Virus record (IMG/VR): IMGVR_UViG_3300046507_000667
Span: 124,001-188,000 of that record
Length of the DNA: 64,000 nt
Direction: 5' to 3' (one strand)
The notes under the pieces: model-generated
Databases searched by the model: none
What the model was told of the DNA's origin: nothing
The model's input: the letters and a program-made list of their open reading frames with translations, nothing else
Position numbers and translations under genes: made by a program
In this document: one piece after another, positions 1 to 63,965 of the stretch
How positions within the stretch are numbered: position 1 is the stretch's first letter
Layout: every line of letters begins with the position of its first letter

Positions 1-3000
1 TAGCTGTAACGGCACCCTTAATACGCTGCTTAAAGCCCATTGTAAACTTACTAAATCTTGTACCCATTGGTCCAGTATACTGATAGGAACCAATCTTACC
101 ATCTACTACGTAAACATGTAGAGGACGACGACGAGTTAGATTAATAAGTTCTGAATGATTGCTTACATAAACAGCTTCACCACTCTTACCCATTTGGCCA
201 AAATGACCTACACCTAGTACTCTACCAGCTACTCTTGATGCAGTATTAACTACTCCACGTGCAGCAGTTAGACCAAATTTAGCTACAGAAGCAGCTAATT
301 TAAGGAGACCTACAGTAGCATGACCTAAACCCTTTACGAAGGTATTAATTACTGGAACTGCACTCTTAATAAGTGTAGTAGTAATTGATGCTAATCCCTT
401 AGCTAATGGGACAGCTACCTGTGACATAAAGTGTCCAGCAGCTTCAACGATAGATGAAATAGCTTTAGTTGCAGCCTTTAGTAATGAAGTAGCAACTTGA
501 CCTACAGATACAATCGCATGACCTAGAAGTTCAACACCAGCCTTAACTGCTTTACCTAATGCATTGGCAAGAGTAGGAATGATATTTAGAACACCCTTGG
601 TAATACTAATACCTGCTTGGAAAATAGCCTTACCTAATTGCTTAGGAATTTGCCATAGACCCTTTACTACACCACTAATCATACTAGTTGCAGTATTAAG
701 AAGCTTAAATGGAGCCTTAAGAATCCCCATTGTCATATCTTTCATCCAACGAAGTGGATTACTAAAGAATGATGTCTTGCTTCCTGCATATTTAGCTGGT
801 TTACCCTTTAGACGACGTAGAATATTTTCAACTCGTGTATCGAGTCTAGTCATATTTTTACGCATAAAGCCTAGAATGCTACCTGTATTTTGAGCAGTTA
901 GTCGTAGATCTGAACCATTTAGCGGAGTTAATGCTTTACCTGTTCTTGTCTTAGCAGCTTCAGCATGAACCTTTGGAGCAGTTTCTGCTGATAGATTAGC
1001 TACATCTACAGTATTACGATCATTATGCTCATGAATATTGGTACCTACTTGAGCGCCATGTGAAGAATGTGGCTTAAGAACTGTACCATCTTCAGCAATA
1101 TGACCACTTCTTTGTAGAGAAGAGATTTCAGCTGGAGTTACAGTACGTCCTGCAGCAGCCTGAGCAATCTTTACAGCACCTCTAGCACTACCATTAGCTG
1201 TACCTGATGGACCTAAATTAAGGAAGTTAAAGAACTTACCTGACTTATTTAGACCTTCTAGACGTGCTCTTTCAGCAGCACTAAAGTTTCCTCTACCAGA
1301 CTTTAACTGGTTAAACTTCATTGTATCCGTAACTCCCTTTAGGAAGTTAGTAGGAATACGAAGTAGGAATCTAAATACCTTAGAAAGACCATCTGTAAGC
1401 TTCTTAGTTAGACTATTTAGAGGATCAAGGATATTAGTACGTAGAATATCTACTAACTCATCACCAAAAATCTTCCTAAATAGACCTTTACCTACTGTCT
1501 GGAAGCCACCAAATAATGTAGTCTTTAATTGACCCCATTGATACTTAAGTTCTTCACCTAAAACTGAACGGAATTCCTTAAATACTGGACCAAATAATTC
1601 TTTTGCAGTTTCCTTTAATGGTTTGATGAATTTATCTTGAAATCCACCCCATACTGACTTAAGAAACTTGGAACTTTCTTCCTTTAGGTTAGCCATAAAG
1701 CCTTGCTTAGCTGCTTTATCCTGACCAAATAGAAGTTTATTGAAAAATGGTGAAAAAGTCTCACCTAGATTTCTAAAGAATCCATTCTTTCTCTTGTCTC
1801 CACCAAAAAGTAATGCATTTAACGGCTGAACTAGCTTTTCTTGGAATGCTACACTGATAGATTTGAAAAATGATGTCTTGAAAGCTTCCTTTCTAGAACG
1901 ACCACCTTCTTCACCGCCTAAAAGCCAGAACTTAATTGGAGTCATTAGGTTCTTATTTAAAGAATATCCTAATACTTGACCAAAAGTCATTCTCTTAGCA
2001 GATGCACCATTACCACCTAGCATCCATGTCTTTACTGGTAGAAGGACTGATTTCTCAAACCTTTGACCAAAAGCAGACATTAATGATGTATTTTTTAGAG
2101 TTTTTAGGTTTGTATCACTACCTAATAGAACTCTCTTCATTGGAATGAATACTGAACGTTCTAAACGATGTCCAATAGCCTTCCAAATAGTAAAACCTTT
2201 AGCTTTAGCTTCATTACCACCTAGTAAAGCCTTCTTTAATGGCATTAAAAGAGTACGATCAAATGCTAAACCAATTGATTTAAGAATCGGGGTATTAATT
2301 GCATCTTTTACTGATGTACCTTTACCTAGAAGAGCCATTTTTAGTGGCACTAGGATAGAACGATCGAATCTAAATTGTAAAGTCTGTAGAAAACTATACT
2401 CTCCTGCTCTGCCTTTAGCTTTTTTACCTAAAATTACTTCTTTTAAAGGCATTACAATAGATTTATCAAATCGAAACTTGATAGCATCTACTAGAGTCAT
2501 ATTCTTGTCATTAGTACCTACAGCAGATCCATTAACTGAGTTAACACCTGCACCACCTAGATGAGAAAGACCACGTTTTCCACTGTTTCTACCTGTAAGT
2601 AGCCCAATTAATGGTCCTGAGATCTTATCATGGAAAGCGTCAACGAAACTGGTACCAAAGTTACCTAGTGCGTCAGCAAACTTACCTACAAAACCACCAT
2701 TTCCACCACCGGGAATATTTACATGAGCACCTTGTGCAGATCCATCAGCATTTCTGCCAAAAAGATCCATAATTTGTGTCTTATTGACCTTACCGCCTTT
2801 AATATTTCTCCAAAGCCCGCCTAAACCACCTGCTCTTTGATTCTGTTCAGCACGTAGTGCATCAATTCTATTACGACGACGATTACGTAGTGGAGAATCA
2901 ATACCTTCTTCAGAAGTTAAACCTGGAGTCATACCCATTAGGATGGCAGAATGCTCTTCAGCAGAGCCTAGCTTATCACTAATTGACTTCATTTCATTCA

Positions 3001-43352: not shown

Positions 43353-43445
43353 TTTAATTTTCCTTAAGAAAGAAAAATGCGGAATCCACTATGAACTCCG
43401 CATACATCCCCATACGAAAAAAGTAAAGAGATACTATCTTAAGGT

Positions 43446-44699
43446 TTAATTAATCTTACCATAGATTGATACAATTCTTCCTACAGAATCATTAGATAGA
43501 CCAAACCATGCTCCGGAACTGATATTCGAAAAGACTGGATCGTTACGAACATCAGTAAAATTAATACTCTGCTTAGAGCCTGCAGAACTATCATTGAATT
43601 GCTGAGTAGTTAATAGACCGACTGAAGTAGCTCCATTAGCAATAACCATACGATCAAATGTGATTCTATATGAAAGATCCATATTAAAATCAAATTGAAC
43701 AGAGGTAGCCACAGTACTTTCTTCAGATGCATCTGGTTGTACTTGATCTTTAGATACAAGAGTAAATAGATTCAGGTTACTAATAGATGCAATAGCTGGA
43801 TGTTTAAATAGAGTTCTTGCTGAAACTCCAGGAGTTCTACCAATTGCAGTACCTGATAGATAATACTCGGTAGTATCGCCCTTATTTGTGTCAGGTAAAG
43901 TATCCATTAGATCAGTCTTTGTATTTGGTACAAATAACTGAAGAATTAGATCAGTATCATCAATTGGAGGCAAATGTGATACGGAAGAGCTTGCAATATT
44001 GCCAATAATAGCTACTCGTACTTTTACTTGAGCACTAGTACTATAAGTAACCTTTGCAAACTTCTGACTATCTAATTCAATTTTAAACGGAACTTGAATT
44101 GGTTCACCAGTATCAATATCAAAAAAGTAAGCTGTTGGCCAAGCCAAGAATTGCATTGAGAAGGAAGTACTTCTTACTCCATCCAAAGCTTCAGTTTCTT
44201 CAAAGATATCATTAAATGTAAATGGAACAGCATCTGACTTTGATACTAGATACCTACCAAGCCTATTTAAATAGGTTACTGCATCATTGGTTTCATCTAG
44301 ATCAGATTTAGTCTTATCTGCTTCTGCCTTTACATCATCAATTTGCCCTTGAAGATTTGCACCAACTCTACCAGCTAAATCATCAATTTCTCGTTGAATG
44401 GTATCAAGTCTATTAAGAATATCTACAATTGATTGATTTGTAGTATCCGAGCTACCTTGCCATTCAGCTAATGCATCTTGAATTTGCTTTAAATTAACTT
44501 TCTCTTGATCTGTAAGATACTTGATAATCTTTGCATATGATGGAACTAGGCCATTGTCAGTAGCAACGTCTGTATTCTCATCGCCATTAGCAACTTGCTT
44601 TAGAATATTTACTGCTTGATTGCCTTTAGAGACAATCGCTTTAATTTGTACTGCATAGTCAATTAGACTAACGATATCGGTACCGTCACCTGTAGCCAT
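43446..44699 (-). CDS. Fibre/baseplate-attached protein
   Basis: NGDENT..GLVPSY module plus coiled coil. Confidence 0.65.
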   Translation of the reverse strand: MATGDGTDIVSLIDYAVQIKAIVSKGNQAVNILKQVANGDENTDVATDNGLVPSYAKIIKYLTDQEKVNLKQIQDALAEWQGSSDTTNQSIVDILNRLDTIQREIDDLAGRVGANLQGQIDDVKAEADKTKSDLDETNDAVTYLNRLGRYLVSKSDAVPFTFNDIFEETEALDGVRSTSFSMQFLAWPTAYFFDIDTGEPIQVPFKIELDSQKFAKVTYSTSAQVKVRVAIIGNIASSSVSHLPPIDDTDLILQLFVPNTKTDLMDTLPDTNKGDTTEYYLSGTAIGRTPGVSARTLFKHPAIASISNLNLFTLVSKDQVQPDASEESTVATSVQFDFNMDLSYRITFDRMVIANGATSVGLLTTQQFNDSSAGSKQSINFTDVRNDPVFSNISSGAWFGLSNDSVGRIVSIYGKIN

Positions 44700-44709
44700 G
44701 ATTTACCCT

Positions 44710-45444
44710 TTAACTTTTTGGAAGATAGTTATAGAATGCACCTGTACCTTCAGGTAAAGTTACATTCGCAAGATTATACAGTTCATCAGTCCATTCCTCA
44801 GTGAAGTCAAAGATAGCAGCATAAATATCCTTGAATACTGGAGTCCAATTCATTGTAAAGTCATGATACATCGTTACATTAGCAAAGATGTATAGACGAT
44901 CCATACCTGAAGTATCCAGAGTGACATTACTCCAGCTTGAGCTTGGACGTAATGTATCGAATAGTGAGGTAGCTGACCAAGAATCATACTTATAGTCAAA
45001 GGAATCTCTGTCTGTAATAGTACGAGTTCTCTGATATGACAATGAAATGAATTTTTGAATCTTAGCTAAATCTTTAGCTGGAATGTACTTGATATTACTT
45101 AAATTAAACTGTGTAACTGAATAAATCTTATTACAGATCATAAGGATATACCATAGATCTGCATTATTATAGAGTCGTAGAGCTACCAATTCTGGACGAT
45201 ACATTTCTGAAGGATCAACATCAATTGTGTCAATGTATGGCTCAAAATAAAAGAACATATCCTTCAATGTGCATACAGGTTCCTGAATAGTATACTCATC
45301 TTTTTCAAATTCCACTAACACCCTATCAGAAAGATTATATAGCTGTAGCGGATTTGTTTTAGCATTATTAATTGATTCTGTAAACGTAGCATACGCAGAA
45401 GAATCATATTTAGCAAATGAAACATCTGTATTTAAGCTAGCCAT
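44710..45444 (-). CDS. Baseplate wedge protein, T4 gp53/LysM-like
   Basis: YRPELVALRLYNNADLWYILMICN motif. Confidence 0.7.
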   Translation of the reverse strand: MASLNTDVSFAKYDSSAYATFTESINNAKTNPLQLYNLSDRVLVEFEKDEYTIQEPVCTLKDMFFYFEPYIDTIDVDPSEMYRPELVALRLYNNADLWYILMICNKIYSVTQFNLSNIKYIPAKDLAKIQKFISLSYQRTRTITDRDSFDYKYDSWSATSLFDTLRPSSSWSNVTLDTSGMDRLYIFANVTMYHDFTMNWTPVFKDIYAAIFDFTEEWTDELYNLANVTLPEGTGAFYNYLPKS

Positions 45445-45489
45445 ATATACCTTCTTATAGATGCCATAAATTTAAAAAAAAGAATCGGT

Positions 45490-45523
45490 AAAAAAAAAAA
45501 GATCCCTCCTGCAGAGAGGGATC
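45490..45523 (-). terminator. Intrinsic terminator
   Basis: GATCCCTC-7nt-GAGGGATC followed by T11 on minus strand. Confidence 0.8.
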
Positions 45524-45664
45524 GAAAAATTCCGCGCTCGGATTAGCTCACAAGTCTGGAATTAAGGAAAACTAGCACAAAGCACTTATCTATATTGCGA
45601 GATATAGATGAGTACTTTATGAGTAACAACCTATAAGGAATATTGCTATTCTCTATAGGTTGTC
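45490..45664 (-). ncRNA. Candidate ~175-nt early small RNA
   Basis: Early promoter, two long hairpins, a UUUUCCUUAAUU single-stranded segment, terminator with U11; no ORF with RBS. Confidence 0.6.
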
Positions 45665-45679
45665 ATGAAAATAATATAT
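45664..45679 (-). promoter_or_regulatory. Early promoter ATATATTAT-N5-TG
   Basis: ATATATTAT tttca TG. Confidence 0.7.
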
Positions 45680-45702
45680 ACCTACCGGGCTATTTGTTAC
45701 GG

Positions 45703-46308
45703 TTATACACAGAACTTCTTTAATTGCTGTTTGAATGCCACTGGATCGAAATAAGTACGTTGTTTATACTTATATGGATAATCATAATTTAAATAATCAT
45801 CGATAAGTTTTTGACTATAACGCTTATAGTCAAAAATATCTTCCAGCCAATGTACACAGTCAATATAAGTGCCCATTCTTAATGTTTGTAATAATGGTGC
45901 AATGACTCTAGAAGCAAGAACACTATACATACGTTCATCTGGAATTCTTAACGAAAAGTCATCCTGAATAGCAATTACAATTGCATCTTGATAGAAAGAG
46001 TCAATATAAAAATTATCAATTAGACTACCAAGCCAAGGACTTCTATAGTTAAGCGGCGCTGCATTAAAAACTTCCCAATCATTCTGAATTTCATTTACAT
46101 AAAAATGAAATGGTACTTGATGAAGCTCTTGATTCTCCCTAAAGTAGTTAAATACTCTACGATAAGCATAATATGGTACATATCCTTCTAACTCTGGAGT
46201 TAGTGGATTAGTACGCAGAGAAAAATTACTAACCTGCGTTATAATAATATGCTTATTCACTCTACGTTTCTCAATTGAACGTAATGGATATAGTTTTGAT
46301 GGACCCAT
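45703..46308 (-). CDS. Hypothetical late protein (possibly degenerate amidase fold)
   Basis: Start moved to ATG 46308 because a late promoter lies at 46338-46349; HIIIT..VPFHFYV is only a weak amidase-like pattern. Confidence 0.55.
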   Translation of the reverse strand: MGPSKLYPLRSIEKRRVNKHIIITQVSNFSLRTNPLTPELEGYVPYYAYRRVFNYFRENQELHQVPFHFYVNEIQNDWEVFNAAPLNYRSPWLGSLIDNFYIDSFYQDAIVIAIQDDFSLRIPDERMYSVLASRVIAPLLQTLRMGTYIDCVHWLEDIFDYKRYSQKLIDDYLNYDYPYKYKQRTYFDPVAFKQQLKKFCV

Positions 46309-46337
46309 GAAATTTCTTTGAAGTTTGAGTGGAATAA

Positions 46338-46349
46338 TATCTATTTGTT
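46338..46349 (-). promoter_or_regulatory. Late promoter AACA-N6-TA
   Basis: AACAAATAGATA. Confidence 0.6.
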
Positions 46350-46362
46350 GAAAAGAATGCAA

Positions 46363-46374
46363 AACATGAAATTA
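46363..46374 (+). promoter_or_regulatory. Late promoter AACA-N6-TA
   Basis: AACATGAAATTA, divergent partner. Confidence 0.6.
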
Positions 46375-46400
46375 ATTAAAACTGATTAGGAAAGTATTAC

Positions 46401-47285
46401 ATGTTTTTATATCTTTCAGCTATATTACTCTTCTTATCAGGAGGATTGATTACACTTGTATCGATATTTTTCTCGATTCATGGTTTTCTTTCATTTGTAC
46501 CTGATCCGAATCTTTATTATGGTATTCTTGGTTTGGGTATTGGTTTTGAGATTGCAAAAGTAACAGTCTCTACATTCCTTTTCCATGCTTGGAATGATAA
46601 GGGATTTCCTTGGTTTATTAAAAGTTATATGCTGGTAGCTGTAGTATCACTCATTGCGTTTAGTAGTATTTTTACATTCGTTCACTTGAATTCTTCGATA
46701 TCAGGTGTAAGCGCAGATACTACATTGAATGATACTAAAGTTACACAACTACAGGAAAGAAATAAGACTATTCAAGCAGAAATTGATTCTCTTAATCAAC
46801 AGGTAGCAGCTATTCCTAGTAATATGAATAGTGCTAGAATGCGATTAATGGATAAGATTACTCCTAGAAAAGATAAACTTTCTAAAGAATTGGAAGACAA
46901 TAGTAAAACTATCTCTGAAGTACAGGTTCAAACTGTAAAAGACGATAAATTTGTATTCTTAACTAGTATCAGCAATATGACTGGTATGAGTCGAGAAAGT
47001 ATCGTTGTCAAGGTAATTTTATTTATTGTACTATCAATTGATCCTTTAGCAATCAGTCTTTTTCTTGCAGCGTCATTTATTCTATCTAAGCTTAAGCCTA
47101 AAATAGAAGAAATAAAGCCTATTGAGAAGATTGTATCAGAAGTAATTACTCCAATTAAAGAACCAGAGCCTATTATTGATCCAATAGTAGAAACTCTACC
47201 AGTACAAGAATTTGAAGAAGAACTTCCAATTGAGAAGCCTTTGAATAGTCGAATGGTGAAAATGATCAAAAAACAGAAAGATTAA
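46401..47285 (+). CDS. Membrane protein: three TMs, coiled coil, C-terminal TM
   Basis: GFEIAK and IVLSIDPLAI motifs; AGGA RBS. Confidence 0.7.
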   Translation: MFLYLSAILLFLSGGLITLVSIFFSIHGFLSFVPDPNLYYGILGLGIGFEIAKVTVSTFLFHAWNDKGFPWFIKSYMLVAVVSLIAFSSIFTFVHLNSSISGVSADTTLNDTKVTQLQERNKTIQAEIDSLNQQVAAIPSNMNSARMRLMDKITPRKDKLSKELEDNSKTISEVQVQTVKDDKFVFLTSISNMTGMSRESIVVKVILFIVLSIDPLAISLFLAASFILSKLKPKIEEIKPIEKIVSEVITPIKEPEPIIDPIVETLPVQEFEEELPIEKPLNSRMVKMIKKQKD

Positions 47286-47291
47286 AAGACT

Positions 47292-47319
47292 CCCTATACC
47301 CTCGAAAGAAGGTATAGGG
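47292..47319. terminator. CCC(T/C)ATAC-family hairpin, bidirectional
   Basis: Between convergent genes. Confidence 0.75.
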
Positions 47320-47324
47320 TTTCT

Positions 47325-48340: not shown

Positions 48341-48346
48341 ATTTAA

Positions 48347-49317
48347 TTATTCTTCTTCGCCGATTTCATCAGCTAGATTAATAGTCTTTACTCGGTTACG
48401 TGGTGCTGCAGATGGTTTCTTTTTAATTCCACCACCATTAATATAACCCTGTGAATCTTCATTCAATTCATCTTCTTCATCCTGATCTTCCATCACGAAT
48501 GAGCCAAGGGTATCAGCAATCTTATCTACAGATGCTGACTCTTTTAATTCATAATCTTCAACTAGACGCATACCATTATCAGGCTCAAATGGATGTGCAA
48601 AATAACCCGCTGTAATACGAGTTTGATTCTTATCTGCACGATTCTTTAAGTCTTTAAAAGTAAGCCACATACTCTTTGTACTTACAGCATATTCCCGATT
48701 AATACCGGCAACAAAGTCTGCATTTTCAAGAAGCATATTGGATTCAGAAATCATAGCTTGAGTAATTTTATTACCCACGTCCATTTTCTTTTTACCGTCT
48801 GCTGATGTCTCTTCAAGAACACGATAAGCTTCACGGTTAAGCTGATTAGCTGTAATCACTGGAATCTTACGTGCTTTCGAAAGAGTACTAAATTCATTAA
48901 TAGCTTCACCAATATCAATACGTAGATCACCTGTAGGAAAATCTGGCTTAATACGTTTAATATAGTCATGAATAATAATCTTTACTTCTACATTTTCTTC
49001 AGATTCAACTTCATTGATAATACCTTCAATATCACCAGTGGAAATTGAATTCTTTGGACGGTATTTAATCTGTAAGTCCCAACGTCCATCCCGTAGCTTT
49101 TCCCTTACCATATTGGCAAGGATTTCATTAGTACCTAGTGCTTTACCATCATCATTCAGCCCTTTAACATATGAAATGGTACGTTCAAGGGTTTCATGAT
49201 TATCATTTTCTTGTGATAGATATAAAACACAGGGTCTTTTTGATCTATCATTGCATACAATATCATCATTATATTTACAAGCCCAAAATGCTACATTAAG
49301 CAATAGGCCGGATTTCC
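48347..49317 (-). CDS. dnaB: DnaB-like replicative helicase, exon 2
   Basis: LYLSQEN, IIHDY, ITANQLNR, ISES and KNR motifs; spliced product 565 aa. Confidence 0.88.
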
Positions 49318-50482
49318 CATTTATGTTATCGGTGATCGTTAATCACCTTCTTATGTTTTCACATAAGATCAGACTATATCTTATTGAGAAATAAAATATT
49401 TCTCAATATCTATATTTCCAGAATCACTTGATTCCGTACTCTCACTATGGAGATAGTCGTTGAACATTATTTCTAATAATCTGCCAAGATTATCGAATTC
49501 CCAATAGGGAATTCTAACTAAACCAATTCCGTTATCAATACAAAATTTATTCTTATATTGATCAATTTCCTGCCTTTTTATAAATTCGACCTTATGCTTT
49601 TCTAAATTTAAAAATGCTTCATAATGAAAGCGACCATCATACTCAATAAAGAAATAGCCTTCAGGTAAATCTATTTTAAAATCATATTTAATAAATTTAC
49701 TACGTGTATTTGGTGGATTATACTGTTCTGAAAAACTAATATTATGCTTAGTTAACCATTGTCGTATAAATTCTTCACCTTTAGAAGATATGCAATTTGG
49801 ACAGCGATTTCCCTTCACAATAAAGTTATTTGGTCTCATAGTAAAAATAGTATTACATTCTTTATGAATGAATTTCTTTTTATCATGAGTATTAGTATAT
49901 TCATCTATAAATTCATACTCATTATTAGTAATAGTACTAATTTGAGATTTAAATTCATCAGTAGAATACCTATAACTTCTATGTGAACATTTAGGACATC
50001 TAGTACCACCACCTAAAAAACCTTTTGGTGTAACTTCAAATTCATTCCCACAAATATGACGTAAAATTACTTTTTCATTATAATTTGTATAATTACTTAA
50101 GCATATATAGCTATTTATATGAGATATTTTTTCTTCAAAAGATTCTTTAGTAACTTTCATAAATCCAGCACAAAAAGGGCATCTAGTACCTTTTCGTTTA
50201 CTTGATCCTCTGAAGTCACCACGTTTAGCACTAAAAGTTCTTTTACAAACTTCATGTCTAAATTCAATAGGTGTATGATACTTTTTATATTCGGATAGCA
50301 CCGTATATTCATCGCCAACCAAATCACGAACTTCTAAGAGAAATTCTTTGTGAGTTGTTTGTCGTGGCATACATATCCCTTAAAATTTCTTGGCAGAGAT
50401 GAAATAATGCTGCTGATTGCCCTCGTCTTAATACGTTAGGGGTTTCCAGCAATTAATAGATTTTATAGTGAACTGAAAGTTA
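49318..50482 (-). mobile_element. Group I intron in dnaB (1165 nt)
   Basis: P AATTGCTGGAAA, Q AATCAGCAG, R GTTCAACGACTA, S AAGATATAGTCT; P1 GUGGAU/GUUCAC with U.G pair; terminal G; splicing restores GTSSGWKS. Confidence 0.9.
49381..50370 (-). CDS. Intron-encoded homing endonuclease (Zn-ribbon repeats plus Vsr-like/EDxHD nuclease)
   Basis: Three H..C...RCPxC repeats; YDF..IEYDGRFHY. Confidence 0.85.
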   Translation of the reverse strand: MPRQTTHKEFLLEVRDLVGDEYTVLSEYKKYHTPIEFRHEVCKRTFSAKRGDFRGSSKRKGTRCPFCAGFMKVTKESFEEKISHINSYICLSNYTNYNEKVILRHICGNEFEVTPKGFLGGGTRCPKCSHRSYRYSTDEFKSQISTITNNEYEFIDEYTNTHDKKKFIHKECNTIFTMRPNNFIVKGNRCPNCISSKGEEFIRQWLTKHNISFSEQYNPPNTRSKFIKYDFKIDLPEGYFFIEYDGRFHYEAFLNLEKHKVEFIKRQEIDQYKNKFCIDNGIGLVRIPYWEFDNLGRLLEIMFNDYLHSESTESSDSGNIDIEKYFISQ

Positions 50483-56160: not shown

Positions 56161-56493
56161 TTAATTTGCTGTCTTATTTTTGATGGTGGTACGACGTCGC
56201 AAATAATTGCTTCGCTTAGGACCATAACCAGCATAGTCGGTATCTCGTGACGAGTGACTGACAGCGCTGTTATGTCCACCTGCCATTGCCACAGATTGGT
56301 CAAAACCGAAATTACCGTTAAACGTATCTTGATGCAATGCTTTGATGCTATCAACGACACGCTGAATAGATGGGGTTTGCTGCTCTACTTCAAAGATATC
56401 CTGCCTGCTCTTTACGCTGTTTTGTTCAGCTGTCGCTACTACCGTTGCGTTGGTGCCGAATACTGCATTAAGAATGCGGTCTTTGAAAGACAT
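56161..56493 (-). CDS. Hypothetical protein embedded in structured RNA
   Basis: 110 aa, GAGGT RBS, about 45% GC by hand count. Confidence 0.55.
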   Translation of the reverse strand: MSFKDRILNAVFGTNATVVATAEQNSVKSRQDIFEVEQQTPSIQRVVDSIKALHQDTFNGNFGFDQSVAMAGGHNSAVSHSSRDTDYAGYGPKRSNYLRRRTTIKNKTAN

Positions 56494-56707: not shown

Positions 56708-56723
56708 CATAGATATAATATAT
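56708..56723 (-). promoter_or_regulatory. Early promoter ATATATTAT-N5-TG
   Basis: ATATATTAT atcta TG. Confidence 0.7.
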
Positions 56724-56731
56724 ACTTATTA

Positions 56732-56864
56732 ATGTAGCAGGTTCGATTGCTTTAAAAGTCCCCCTATCAGTACAACGCAGTATCACTTAGGGGACGACCT
56801 TTATGATAGTCTTTCTGCATCTGATAGGGGAATGAAATTCAAAGCTCACTTACCTTTGCTACAT
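56732..56864 (-). ncRNA. Candidate ~130-nt rod-shaped ncRNA
   Basis: Nested stems AUGUAGCA/UGCUACAU, GCUUU/AAAGC, CCCCUAUCAG/CUGAUAGGGG, UGCAG/CUGCG, UAUCA/UGAUA; 5' end coincides with an early promoter. Confidence 0.6.
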
Positions 56865-61620: not shown

Positions 61621-62364
61621 TTAAATTTCTAAATCAATAATATCCCGCTCATATAATTGCTTAATGATAAAAGCAGATGTCATCATTCCATGTAGAGAAG
61701 GAACTCGAATTACTTCAATTCCATGCTCTTTGCAAAGTTTAAACTTAGTTTTGTCTCTATTCATTGTCTTTGGAAATTCAGCTTCTCTTCCTTGCTTGGA
61801 AATATAATGCTGTTCACCATCACATTCAATAGCTAAGTTGTACTCTGGTAGGAAGAAATCAATCCTAAGACCAAATTCTAGCTTAAGCCAGTCAAAAGTC
61901 TTTTCTTCTTCATATACAATTTCAACTTCATCCAGTACTTCTTTAACTGCAATTGAAGTCTTTGATTTAGTTTGATTACATGGACACCTAGTACCATTAT
62001 GAAATAAATCAGGACGAGTTTTCCAATCCTTTCCACAGGTCTTATGTCTAAGTAATACATGAGTTTTGTTATTCACATAGCTACTAATTAAAGTATATTC
62101 ATTTCCTGTCAAATCTTTTAGCTTTTGACTAAATTCTTCAGCAGTATAACTCCATGATCTATGTGTAGCACACTTGGGACAATTATTCGGTTTTGGTTTA
62201 AGAAAATCATAAGGAGACGTGGTTCCCCACTCATGCCCACACTTATTGTGTTTGAGCATAATAGGATCATGATTCCGAATATACTGTCCTAGAACTGTAT
62301 ACTCTTTACCATATCGATCGCTAACTCGTTTACAAAATTCATCATGTGTAAGTTGTTTTGGCAT
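61621..62364 (-). CDS. Intron-encoded homing endonuclease (Zn-ribbon repeats plus Vsr-like/EDxHD nuclease)
   Basis: Two H..CG..W..CP repeats; IDFFLP..IECDGEQHY. Confidence 0.85.
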   Translation of the reverse strand: MPKQLTHDEFCKRVSDRYGKEYTVLGQYIRNHDPIMLKHNKCGHEWGTTSPYDFLKPKPNNCPKCATHRSWSYTAEEFSQKLKDLTGNEYTLISSYVNNKTHVLLRHKTCGKDWKTRPDLFHNGTRCPCNQTKSKTSIAVKEVLDEVEIVYEEEKTFDWLKLEFGLRIDFFLPEYNLAIECDGEQHYISKQGREAEFPKTMNRDKTKFKLCKEHGIEVIRVPSLHGMMTSAFIIKQLYERDIIDLEI

Positions 62365-62398: not shown

Positions 62399-62627
62399 AC
62401 ACAATCACCCTCTACCGATACATATCTCATGCTTTCACATGAGTTCAGATCATATCTTCATACTTAGTTTCAAGTATGTCTCCCGTTTCCCCTGCACTTG
62501 CAGAGTACGCCTTATGGCTGATCGTTGAACGTTCCTTTTTCAAGGCTTCGCTGCTGATTGTCCTCATCTTTACATGTTAGGAGTTTCCAGCAATTAGAGA
62601 GATTTAATGAGAGCAACTCGGCAGTTT

Positions 62628-63965
62628 ACCCTCAACGAGATATAGCTCTGTACGTACACCGTCTTTTTCTTGACAATCTACGAACTTTGAGATATTGGAA
62701 AGTGACGTTACAAATGAACCACTTTCTTTCTTCACATTCTCAAGAGCACGTTTCTGTGCTAGACGAGACTTAGCTGAAAGAGCAAACTTAGTCGCAAGGA
62801 TTTTCATTTCCTTTGGACTATTATTCATCCACTCATCTAGCTTTGCATTTGTATACGACAATACATGGCCCGCTACATCAGTATTGACAAGCTTCTGTTT
62901 AGTCTGTGATGAATATTTCGGATTGAATACGAATACTGATACTACTGCTTCAAGACCAACGAATACATCTTCATTGTCAATCTTTTCTTTCGTAAGATTC
63001 TTTTCACGAACGAATGCAGTTACTTTCTGACTCAATGACCGTTTGAAACCAGTCACATGAGTACCACCTTCAGTAGTCTTAATAGTATTGGTAAATGACG
63101 TAATATTGTCACTTGCAAAACTATCATTCCAAGTTAAAGCAATTTCAATCTTAGTATCATTAATAACTTCTGAGGCAAGAGATACAGGAGCAATGATACC
63201 TTTCTTACCTACTGCTTCGGCTAGGAAGTCAGCTACACCTTCCTTGAAGTTATGAATAATCGGCTTTTCTTGATGACAGCTATGATATTCAACTGTCAAG
63301 CCAGAATTAAGTTGTGCAACTTCACGGAGGAATTTGACAATTTCTTCTTCAATAGGTAAAGTACCTTCCTCAAAGAATTGAGGATTGAATTGGAAGTTGA
63401 CACGAGTTGAAGACTTCTTATAACGCTTATCAGCTGGTAAAGTAACATTTTTCGATACCTTTACCTTCTGCTCATAACCATTATTGAAGGTAATTTCACC
63501 CTTATCAGTTCCTCGTTGTGCTTCTACATAAAAGATTGCTGAAAGAGCATTAACACATGACGCACCAACACCATTTAGACCAGTAGAATATACTGTCTTC
63601 TTTTCAAAGTTACGACCAGCATGGAGCTTGCCAAAAATCTTTGATAGGGTATTGGAACCATCATCTTGCTTATCAAATGGAACACCTCGGCCATTATCAT
63701 AGACAGAGAAGCTATAGTCATCATGCCGTGTAACAATGATAGCCGTTGCAAAACCTGCAAGAAATTCATCAACTGAGTTATTGATGATTTCTCGAATAGC
63801 TGTCAAATAACCTGCAGAGTCATTTGGACCAATATACATCTGTGGACGTACTTGGACACATTCCGGAAATGGAAGTTCTTTAATGTCCTTACCAGTATAG
63901 TCATTTGCTACTTTAGTAGCTGCTGCAGCAATAGCCGTTTTTTCTACAGACTTAGTACGAGCCAT
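62628..63965 (-). CDS. gyrB: DNA gyrase subunit B, exon 1 (GHKL ATPase)
   Basis: RPQMYIG, EIINNSVDE, DNGRGVP, GLNGVGAS, EGGTH and LYLVEG motifs. Confidence 0.92.

What the first reader, a model, noticed from the sequence alone, without database searches (positions are those of the whole stretch)
45490..45679. Early small RNA carrying an anti-Shine-Dalgarno segment
Seen: a perfect early promoter sits inside a late structural region and is followed by no usable ORF. The predicted +1 G opens a ~18-bp imperfect hairpin with a GCAA loop (45624-45665), followed by a second hairpin (45579-45618), an unpaired UUUUCCUUAAUU stretch and a strong U11 terminator. That stretch is complementary to UAAGGAAAA, the RBS used upstream of 11030, 16075 (12-nt match AAUUAAGGAAAA), 34905, 43352 and 54070. 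Inference: a trans-acting sRNA that blocks or titrates ribosome-binding sites of phage or host mRNAs.
Basis: partly seen in the sequence, partly recalled or inferred. Interest (0 to 1): 0.72.

Follow-up and report, generated by a model that had tools for sequence, protein, structure and literature searches.

The report
Orphan early structured RNA in jumbo phage
An uncultivated AR9/phiR1-37-type giant phage carries, wedged between two tail-baseplate genes, a promoter-to-terminator unit that should make a ~175-nt tightly folded non-coding RNA early in infection. Its one exposed stretch is complementary to the phage's own typical ribosome-binding site, but no expression or comparative data could test what it does.

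Summary
The sequence features are real. On the minus strand there is a perfect core of the experimentally defined AR9 virion-RNA-polymerase early promoter (ATATATTAT-N6-G, +1 = 45664), one of 55 in this 249-kb metagenomic phage. It is followed by three stem-loops and the strongest intrinsic terminator in the genome (9-bp stem, U11). No ORF in the unit has a ribosome-binding site.

The predicted 175-nt RNA folds at -63.5 kcal/mol (z = -8.4), the most structured start of any early transcript. A 7-nt linker, UUUCCUU, is predicted fully unpaired. It complements the phage's consensus ribosome-binding site (U)AAGGAAA.

In phiR1-37, AR9 and four metagenomic relatives the two flanking genes abut or overlap, so the unit is a lineage-specific insertion.

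It has no Rfam match, no similar sequence in the phage, viral-contig, metagenome or genome collections searched, and no paralogue. Only near-identical strains exist, so covariation cannot be tested, and no RNA-seq run was listed.

Verdict: a credible new early non-coding RNA candidate, of the kind now reported in phiKZ, 201phi2-1 and phiR1-37. The anti-Shine-Dalgarno mechanism is plausible, with modest statistical support, but unproven. A leader/attenuator or a functionless recombination remnant remain serious rivals.

The parts
45703..46308 (-). Upstream late gene, homologue of phiR1-37 virion protein g046 and AR9 g011. This is the 201-aa model. A TTG at 46362 would give 219 aa, but it lies upstream of the late start site.
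   Evidence: late-promoter motif AACA-N6-TA at 46349-46338
45694..45702 (-). Upstream element of the early promoter (CCGTAACAA; genome consensus GTATTAA at -36 to -30).
   Evidence: AR9 Table S2 shows CCGTATTAAAA in the same register
45664..45679 (-). Early (virion RNA polymerase type) promoter core ATATATTAT-N6-G; predicted +1 G at 45664.
45625..45664 (-). Hairpin H1, starting at +1: 12 + 5 bp, one A/C mismatch, GCAA tetraloop. Its 3' arm holds a second, sequestered UUCCUUA.
45571..45624 (-). Hairpin H2, about 22 bp with bulges and a 6-nt loop.
45564..45570 (-). Unpaired linker UUUCCUU, the candidate seed. With its neighbours it reads GUUUUCCUUAAUU, complementary to AAUUAAGGAAAAC.
   Evidence: (opening energy 0.01 kcal/mol)
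45528..45563 (-). The only strain SNP (45539, G to A in the RNA) turns a U.G pair into U-A.
45490..45523 (-). Intrinsic terminator: 9-bp GC-rich stem, 5-nt loop, U11 (9-11 U among strains). It has the longest U-run of the roughly 13 intergenic terminator-like hairpins in the genome.
45443..45452 (-). Right copy of a 10-nt direct repeat AGGTATATAT (left copy at 45683-45674, inside the promoter). The two copies bracket the 231-nt cassette. This copy overlaps the ATG of the downstream gene and the region just upstream of it.
   Evidence: D2; chance of such a repeat in 281 nt is about 0.1 (own estimate)
44710..45444 (-). Downstream late gene. Its N-terminal 147 aa are homologous to phiR1-37 g047 (T4 gp53-like baseplate wedge). 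It has its own RBS, AAGAAGG.

Best explanation
A 231-258-bp cassette, inserted in this phage lineage between two otherwise adjacent late virion genes, is a stand-alone gene for an early non-coding RNA of about 170-175 nt.

Shown from sequence:
- Both elements of an AR9-type early promoter are present.
- A G at +1 opens a 5'-terminal hairpin.
- Three stem-loops are followed by a canonical terminator.
- There is no coding potential.
- A fully accessible 7-nt linker, UUUCCUU(A), lies between H2 and H3.

Inferred:
- The injected virion RNA polymerase transcribes the unit from the first minutes of infection.
- The 5' hairpin and the terminator hairpin make the RNA stable, so it accumulates.
- The linker pairs with AAGGAAA-type ribosome-binding sites (9-12 bp at the best sites). 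That is more than the 6 bp the end of 16S rRNA could offer such sites, assuming an E. coli-type ...CCUCCUUA-3' tail, because the host is unknown.
- Pairing occludes 30S binding on a subset of phage mRNAs, and perhaps host mRNAs.
- Sites matching 7 nt or more are about twice as frequent among genes behind early promoters, so the likeliest role is delayed down-tuning of early-gene translation.
- As a by-product, the terminator also stops early transcription from entering the baseplate genes.
For: Promoter:
- The core is identical to the mapped AR9 consensus, and the genome holds 55 copies.
- The genome encodes homologues of the phiR1-37 virion RNA polymerase subunit g099 and an Rpb2-domain protein.

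Transcription unit:
- It is the only one of 55 early promoters with T-runs of 7 or more, or a terminator, before the next gene.
- The terminator is the strongest in the genome.

Structure:
- z = -8.4.
- It is the most structured of all 55 early transcript starts: z = -7.35, against a median of -0.95.
- The minus-strand RNA folds 6 kcal/mol better than the plus strand, owing to 6 G.U pairs.
- The only SNP among strains converts a U.G pair to U-A in H3.

Coding potential and seed:
- No ORF has an RBS.
- The linker is unpaired, with opening energy 0.01 kcal/mol.
- The phage RBS consensus is (T)AAGGAAA: 103 of 307 genes carry AAGGA and 40 carry AAGGAAA.
- TTTTCCTTA occurs 13 times in the genome. 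Eleven copies are the reverse of RBSs, and the only sense-intergenic copy is this one.
- The seed window has the best mean duplex energy of all windows of the RNA against the 307 initiation regions. Only 6 of 200 shuffles equal it.
- Matches of 7 nt or more are found at 38 of 130 early-class genes and 19 of 126 late-class genes, p = 0.007.

Insertion:
- The flanking genes overlap or abut in phiR1-37, AR9 and four metagenomic relatives.

Precedent:
- Intergenic and 5'UTR-derived small RNAs have been detected in phiR1-37, phiKZ and 201phi2-1 (PMC4848604, PMC10914365, PMC11512511).
Against: - There is no transcript evidence; no RNA run was listed.
- There are no homologues, so neither covariation nor seed conservation can be assessed.
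- Strain-level data are uninformative. The flanking genes are just as invariant as the RNA.
- The seed is short and complements a motif carried by a third of all genes. Stoichiometric repression of so many targets seems implausible, and the statistics are post hoc (p roughly 0.005-0.03).
- The early/late gene classes were assigned by a crude nearest-promoter rule with a home-made gene caller. That caller mis-set at least one start.
- The predicted best targets have no annotation.
- No phage Hfq, CsrA or RegA homologue was found. The RegA control search matched nothing anywhere, so that result is uninformative.
- No consensus late promoter lies between the terminator and the baseplate gene. Late polymerase must therefore read through the terminator, which raises doubt about how efficient it is.
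Confidence: 0.38

Rival explanations
1. It is a cis-acting leader or attenuator. The promoter and terminator form a premature-termination unit in the 5' region of the baseplate-wedge gene. This is like the '5'UTR-derived ncRNA' units mapped in phiKZ and 201phi2-1, one of which lies upstream of a tail gene. The terminator sets how much transcription, early or late, enters the downstream tail genes. The short RNA is a by-product, or a secondary regulator.
For: - The architecture, a start site followed closely by a terminator just upstream of a gene, matches the units described in PMC10914365 and PMC11512511.
- Late transcripts from the motif at 46349-46338 must cross this terminator to reach the genes at 45444 and 44699. 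No consensus late promoter lies in between.
- In relatives the two genes are translationally coupled. Here the terminator could reset their ratio.
Against: - An early promoter in front of a baseplate gene has no obvious purpose.
- No riboswitch or leader family matches.
- No convincing alternative antiterminator pairing was seen by eye, and the minimum-free-energy and centroid structures are identical.
- The exposed linker does not complement this gene's own RBS, AAGAAGG (sequence).
Confidence: 0.25
2. It is a functionless footprint of recombination. An early promoter, a leader and a terminator from a lost or relocated early gene (a moron) were inserted by microhomology between the promoter core and the start region of the baseplate gene. 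The RNA may be made but does nothing. This resembles the promoter/stem-loop shuffling cassettes described for T4-type phages (recalled from memory; not checked here).
For: - A 10-nt direct repeat, AGGTATATAT, brackets the cassette exactly.
- The cassette is absent from all relatives.
- The promoter shares 18 identical nt with another early promoter in the genome.
- The neighbourhood is mosaic among strains, with contig breaks at 47289-47322 and 48343-48376.
- The RNA has no homologue anywhere.
Against: - A decayed leader or ORF would not be expected to be the most structured early transcript start in the genome.
- Nor would it be expected to pair the longest U-run terminator with a 5' hairpin starting exactly at +1.
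- The single SNP preserves pairing.
- The repeat alone has about a 0.1 probability of arising by chance.
Confidence: 0.2
3. It is a protein-binding or decoy RNA, for example a sponge for a host or phage RNA-binding protein, an RNase substrate, or an anti-defence RNA. The hairpins, not the linker, would be the active part.
For: - The RNA is very stable and multi-hairpin, with a GNRA loop and long near-perfect stems. It would be expressed from the first minutes of infection.
- The U-rich linker next to stems, together with the long U tail, resembles Hfq-binding modules (established knowledge; not tested here).
Against: - There are no tandem repeats of the ToxI or CRISPR-repeat type.
- There are no GGA motifs in loops, as a CsrA sponge would have (sequence).
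- There is no Rfam match and no tRNA or tmRNA.
- There is no adjacent partner gene.
Confidence: 0.1
4. It is an intercistronic processing or stability element of the late polycistronic mRNA, with RNase III-type hairpins between two cistrons. The early-promoter match would be incidental.
For: - Long stems of 17-22 bp lie between two late cistrons that must be co-transcribed.
Against: - The promoter motif is strongly non-random. It has 55 copies, almost all in front of genes, and here it carries the upstream element too.
- Relatives manage without any spacer between the two genes.
Confidence: 0.05

Closest known systems
5'UTR-derived and intergenic ncRNA candidates of jumbo phages phiKZ and 201phi2-1 (ONT-cappable-seq; PMC10914365, PMC11512511)
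   Same: These are phages with their own multisubunit RNA polymerases. The units are short, structured and non-coding, defined by a phage promoter followed closely by a terminator, and often sit just upstream of a gene. One conserved example lies upstream of a tail gene. Their function is unknown.
   Different: No sequence relationship was tested or is expected, because they belong to a different phage clade. Those RNAs were detected experimentally, whereas this one is only predicted. Here the promoter is of the early class while the downstream gene is late and structural.
phiR1-37 misc_4 intergenic sRNA (61,640-61,936; PMC4848604)
   Same: phiR1-37 is the closest characterised relative of this phage. 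misc_4 is an intergenic, ORF-free, strongly structured RNA (z = -7.4). It also carries a UUUCCUU heptamer in a stretch that is unpaired in the predicted centroid structure, near its 3' end.
   Different: - It shows no sequence or covariance-model similarity.
- Its location is different, between g099 and g100.
- The g046/g047 junction of phiR1-37 has no spacer at all.
- The shared heptamer has roughly a 0.03-0.04 chance expectation and may be coincidence.
C/U-rich-seed sRNAs that pair with Shine-Dalgarno sequences (e.g. RsaE/RoxS with UCCC motifs; recalled from established literature, not searched here)
   Same: An exposed pyrimidine-rich motif is complementary to the SD, in an RNA made of stem-loops plus an intrinsic terminator. 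The proposed mechanism, RBS occlusion, is the same.
   Different: - The motif here is UUUCCUU in an inter-helix linker, not UCCC in hairpin loops.
- There is a single exposed copy.
- The RNA is phage-encoded and driven by an early promoter.
- There is no homology: no Rfam match.
AR9 early transcription units (PMC5312081)
   Same: The two-part promoter (CCGTA...ATATATTAT-N6-G+1) is identical, and a virion RNA polymerase would be presumed to use it. AR9 also has some long early leaders of 160-340 nt.
   Different: All 41 AR9 early start sites were assigned to genes, and none was described as an RNA-only unit ending at a terminator. AR9 has 11 nt between its homologues of the two flanking genes.

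Membership tests
AR9-type virion-RNA-polymerase early promoter | Core AAATATATATTAT-N6-G(+1) | tested here: met
   ATATATTAT-N6-G is exact at 45679-45664. The three bases before it (GGT) fall within the variation seen among this genome's 55 copies.
AR9-type virion-RNA-polymerase early promoter | Upstream CCGTAT(T/C)AA element near -36 | tested here: met
   CCGTAACAA is in the same register, matching 5 of 7 consensus positions.
AR9-type virion-RNA-polymerase early promoter | Genome encodes the multisubunit phage RNA polymerases | tested here: met
   There is a homologue of the phiR1-37 virion RNA polymerase subunit g099 (E = 1.4e-43) and an Rpb2_6 domain protein. The late motif AACA-N6-TR is also enriched upstream of genes.
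AR9-type virion-RNA-polymerase early promoter | Transcription starts at the G early in infection | not testable with these tools
   No RNA run was listed. The phage is uncultivated and comes from a rhizosphere metagenome.
Trans-acting base-pairing sRNA | Discrete, abundant transcript with defined ends | not testable with these tools
   Only the promoter and terminator predict it.
Trans-acting base-pairing sRNA | Non-coding | tested here: met
   No ORF of 20 aa or more has a spaced SD.
Trans-acting base-pairing sRNA | Accessible seed complementary to targets beyond chance | tested here: inconclusive
   Accessibility is met. The complementarity is rarer than chance, but it is short, post hoc, and directed at a very common motif.
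Trans-acting base-pairing sRNA | Conservation of seed and covariation in stems | tested here: inconclusive
   Only near-identical strains exist. The one SNP turns U.G into U-A. No relative is closer than about 41% protein identity.
Any Rfam 15 family (riboswitch, leader, sRNA, tRNA-like) | Covariance-model score at or above the gathering threshold | tested here: not met
   The best hit scores 23 bits against a threshold of 65. All hits are below threshold. No tRNA or tmRNA was found.
Homologue of phiR1-37 misc_4 sRNA | Sequence or structure similarity, or synteny | tested here: not met
   The alignment shows no real similarity. Covariance model R1 finds nothing in phiR1-37, AR9, LY01 or LPJP1. 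The neighbouring genes differ.
Premature-termination 5'UTR-derived ncRNA (phiKZ / 201phi2-1 type) | Start site followed within 250 nt by a terminator, upstream of a gene on the same strand | tested here: met
   This holds in silico only: the distance from the start site to the end of the U-run is 175 nt, and the gene starts 46 nt further on.
Premature-termination 5'UTR-derived ncRNA (phiKZ / 201phi2-1 type) | Homology to the conserved sRNA005 / gp182-leader RNA | not tested
   Those sequences were not fetched. The downstream protein gives no phiKZ hit at E <= 1e-5.
Mobile promoter/stem-loop cassette (T4 PeSL-like) | Repeated cassette copies that mediate shuffling | tested here: not met
   Only the promoter itself recurs, and the RNA body is unique in the genome. 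A bracketing 10-nt repeat is present, but it is weak evidence.

The most novel reading that the evidence does not exclude
The RNA mimics the 3' tail of 16S rRNA and is tuned to the phage's own A-extended Shine-Dalgarno sequence, UAAGGAAAA. It would be made by the injected polymerase and stabilised by its terminal hairpins. It would accumulate and progressively out-compete ribosomes on early-gene start sites. That would make it an RNA timer for the early-to-late translational switch, doing with RNA what T4 does with the RegA protein. The closest characterised relative's only known intergenic small RNA, phiR1-37 misc_4, also carries a UUUCCUU heptamer that is unpaired in the predicted centroid fold. 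This hints that the strategy could be shared across this phage group without sequence homology.
Probability: 0.12. Interest if true: 0.8.

Novelty: new member of a known kind. Interest (0 to 1): 0.48.

Why it matters
Small RNAs of strictly lytic phages are only now being catalogued, and almost none has a known mechanism.

This candidate is unusually clean. It has a promoter class with an experimentally defined consensus, a textbook terminator, no ORF and a single exposed motif. It also makes a sharp, testable prediction: occlusion of AAGGAAA-type ribosome-binding sites.

If confirmed, it would be the first mechanistic small RNA in the AR9/phiR1-37 group of uracil-DNA giant phages. It would also be an example of a phage regulating its own translation programme with an anti-Shine-Dalgarno RNA.

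If it is merely a recombination footprint, it still documents how early-promoter microhomology can drop regulatory cassettes between coupled structural genes.

Tried and rejected
- Rfam at gathering and at permissive thresholds gave nothing for this locus. ARAGORN found no tRNA or tmRNA.
- Megablast and blastn of the locus, and of the RNA alone, against 50,697 phage records gave only a phiR1-37 coding match and a chance 32-nt hit.
- The search for related loci with both flanking proteins and with a two-sequence alignment, in viral and metagenome contigs, found only phiR1-37 itself.
- The word-index protein search found only the query's own cluster.
- The exhaustive HMMER search gave 93 relatives, the best at 39-41% identity. 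Their contigs show no spacer between the two genes.
- A gapped DNA pattern (H1 arm ... seed) found no match in viral, metagenome or genome contigs.
- A covariance model of the RNA found no hit in phiR1-37, AR9, Staphylococcus phage LY01 or Listeria phage LPJP1, and no paralogue in the phage's own genome.
- The RNA-run search listed none.
- Laying contigs of four DNA runs showed that the RNA and both flanking genes are invariant apart from homopolymer lengths. It therefore gives no signal of selection.
- Small-protein reading: rejected, because no ORF has an RBS.
- Plus-strand gene using the complementary TAAGGAAAA as its RBS: rejected. There is no start codon at a workable distance, and the 26-aa TTG ORF has a 3-nt spacer.
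- Cis sequestration of the downstream gene's RBS by the linker: rejected. Only about 4 bp are possible with AAGAAGG (sequence).
- Replication origin: no GC-skew inflection at the locus.
- ToxI-like or CRISPR-repeat-like decoy: no tandem repeats.
- Phage-encoded Hfq or CsrA: absent. The RegA search was uninformative because its control failed.
- The other 'orphan' early promoters from my crude gene caller were partly artefacts. The one at genome 101508 precedes a mis-started homologue of phiR1-37 g100.

Full report
**What the window is.** The window is bases 124,001-188,000 of a 249,347-bp single-contig virus record with direct terminal repeats. It was assembled from a rhizosphere metagenome. 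The two genes flanking the finding are homologues of phiR1-37 virion proteins g046 and g047 (42-45% identity). They are more distant homologues of AR9/PBS1 g011 and g010 (baseplate wedge, T4 gp53-like) and of proteins from Staphylococcus and Listeria jumbo phages. The genome encodes a homologue of the phiR1-37 virion RNA polymerase subunit g099 and an Rpb2-domain protein. It is therefore an uncultivated member of the AR9/phiR1-37 group of giant phages, which carry two multisubunit RNA polymerases.

**The promoter.**
- On the minus strand, ATATATTAT (45679-45671) is followed after six bases by G at 45664.
- ATATATTAT occurs 56 times in the genome, and 55 copies have the form ATATATTAT-N6-G. T at -1 is invariant.
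- This is the experimentally mapped early promoter of AR9, AAATATATATTAT-N6-G(+1). In AR9 it works without protein synthesis, so it is attributed to the injected virion polymerase (PMC5312081).
- AR9's Table S2 also shows an upstream CCGTATTAAAA element in many early promoters. This genome's promoters have the same element at -36 to -30.
- The locus carries CCGTAACAA in that register. On non-core positions it ranks 34th of 55, which is ordinary.
- The AR9 late motif AACA-N6-T(A/G) also applies here. It is present in 44 of 154 upstream regions against 5.8 expected. It is three-fold depleted in the window as a whole, 40 against 121 expected.

**What follows the promoter.**
- The 175 nt from 45664 to 45490 fold into H1 (45664-45625, GCAA loop), H2 (45624-45571), a linker UUUCCUU (45570-45564), H3 (45563-45528), and a terminator (45523-45501) followed by U11.
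- The minimum free energy is -63.5 kcal/mol, identical to the centroid. The z-score is -8.4, and none of 200 shuffles is as stable.
- The linker costs 0.01 kcal/mol to keep open.
- The minus-strand RNA folds 6 kcal/mol better than the plus strand, reflecting six G.U pairs.
- No ORF of 20 aa or more in the region has a usable RBS.
- Among all 55 early start sites, the first 175 nt of this one are by far the most structured: z = -7.35, next best -5.2, median -0.95.
- It is the only early promoter with T-runs of 7 or more, or a terminator, before the next gene. Typical leaders are 20-80 nt.
- The terminator has the longest U-run of the roughly 13 intergenic terminator-like hairpins in the genome.

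**The anti-Shine-Dalgarno stretch.**
- With a simple gene caller (307 genes), the phage's RBS consensus is (T)AAGGAAA. AAGGA is present upstream of 103 genes, AAGGAAA upstream of 40, and TAAGGAAAA upstream of 11.
- TTTTCCTTA occurs 13 times in the genome. Eleven copies are the reverse of such RBSs, and the only sense-orientation intergenic copy is this one. TTTCCTTA has two such copies in 38.5 kb of intergenic sequence. The chance that a given 175-nt unit carries one is about 0.005-0.01.
- The 19-nt window 85-103 pairs better with the 307 initiation regions than any other window of the RNA: mean -8.8 kcal/mol, with 95 regions at -10 or below. For the window 90-108, only 6 of 200 composition-matched shuffles do as well.
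- Matches of 7 nt or more are about twice as frequent among genes assigned to early promoters as among late ones: 38 of 130 against 19 of 126, p = 0.007. The class assignment is crude, however.

The complementarity is real and moderately unlikely by chance. It is also short, noticed after the fact, and directed at a motif that a third of the genes share.

**Comparative evidence.**
- The g046 and g047 homologues overlap or abut in phiR1-37 (4-nt overlap) and in four metagenomic relatives. They lie 11 nt apart in AR9. The 258-nt spacer is therefore a lineage-specific insertion.
- A 10-nt direct repeat, AGGTATATAT, brackets it. One copy lies in the promoter. The other overlaps the ATG of the downstream gene and the region just upstream of it. 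This suggests insertion by microhomology, although such a repeat has about a 0.1 chance expectation.
- An exhaustive HMMER search of 1.84 billion cluster representatives found no relative of the upstream protein above 41% identity.
- The RNA has no match in Rfam, in 50,697 phage records, or in viral, metagenome and genome contigs by pattern.
- A covariance model finds nothing in phiR1-37, AR9, LY01, LPJP1 or elsewhere in the phage's own genome.
- Six contigs from sibling samples are near-identical. The only substitution (45539) turns a U.G pair in H3 into U-A. The U-run varies between 9 and 11.
- The flanking genes are equally invariant, so this says nothing about selection.
- No RNA run was listed.

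**A complication.** The only consensus late promoter upstream on this strand is at 46349-46338, in front of the g046 homologue. None lies between the terminator and the baseplate-wedge gene or the next gene. Late transcripts must therefore read through this terminator, or use a non-consensus promoter. AR9 has 24 non-consensus late promoters among 118. This keeps a leader/attenuator reading alive.

**Known context.**
- phiR1-37 RNA-seq revealed one intergenic ORF-free small RNA, misc_4 (PMC4848604).
  - It is unrelated in sequence and location.
  - It is likewise strongly structured, and it carries UUUCCUU in a stretch that is unpaired in the predicted centroid fold, near its 3' end.
  - This is a lead, not evidence.
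  - They are defined by a start site followed closely by a terminator.
  - One lies upstream of a conserved tail gene.
  - Two were confirmed by northern blot (PMC10914365, PMC11512511).

The present unit belongs to that emerging kind. It differs in pairing an early-class promoter with a late structural neighbourhood, and in having one clear candidate seed.

**Verdict.**
- The best reading is a stand-alone early non-coding RNA that acts by pairing its UUUCCUU linker with AAGGAAA-type ribosome-binding sites (confidence about 0.4).
- The rivals are a cis-acting leader/attenuator of the baseplate genes (0.25), a functionless recombination footprint (0.2), a protein-binding decoy (0.1), and a late-mRNA processing element (0.05).
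- It is a new, orphan member of a known kind. Interest is moderate, because everything beyond the anatomy remains untested and, for an uncultivated phage, hard to test.

Noticed in passing
window 56734-56862 (- strand), with a second early promoter whose TSS is at 56708: This is another early start site followed by a non-coding structured stretch. Nucleotides 1-129 form one long irregular hairpin. A second early promoter follows immediately, then a 215-nt leader before the ATG near 56493. It is the second most structured early transcript start (z = -5.2).
   Followed up: partly
window 62426-62653 (- strand): A group I intron matches Rfam RF00028 (77.8 bits, full-length model). An HNH/homing-endonuclease-like gene lies at 49381-50370.
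   Followed up: no
whole window: The AR9-type late-promoter motif AACA-N6-T(A/G) is three-fold depleted overall (40 against about 121 expected) yet enriched upstream of genes (44 of 154 against 5.8 expected). This suggests selection against spurious late promoters.
   Followed up: partly
window 45443-45452 and 45674-45683: A 10-nt direct repeat (AGGTATATAT on the minus strand) brackets the promoter-RNA-terminator cassette. This is consistent with insertion by microhomology between an early promoter and the start of the baseplate gene.
   Followed up: partly
window 43409-44001 and 46784-47276; contig breaks at 47289-47322 and 48343-48376: Strains in sibling metagenomes show dense SNP clusters in the 417-aa gene and in the plus-strand 294-aa gene. 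They carry alternative sequence at two junctions. In contrast, 44047-46783 is invariant. The neighbourhood is mosaic.
   Followed up: no
L014:1024-1030 (phiR1-37 record 61,923-61,929): The published phiR1-37 intergenic sRNA misc_4 carries the same UUUCCUU heptamer near its 3' end, in a stretch that is unpaired in the predicted centroid structure. It shares no other similarity with the RNA studied here.
   Followed up: partly
window 45473-45500: Homopolymer lengths differ among strains. The terminator U-run has 9, 10 or 11 U, and the following T-run has 8, 9 or 10 T.
   Followed up: yes
G000:C1:100380-102168 (outside the window): The homologues of phiR1-37 g100 and g099 are divergently arranged, as in phiR1-37, where misc_4 lies between them. 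The early promoter there (TSS 101508) shares 18 identical nt with the promoter of this finding. About 660 nt of spacer before the g099 homologue were not examined.
   Followed up: partly
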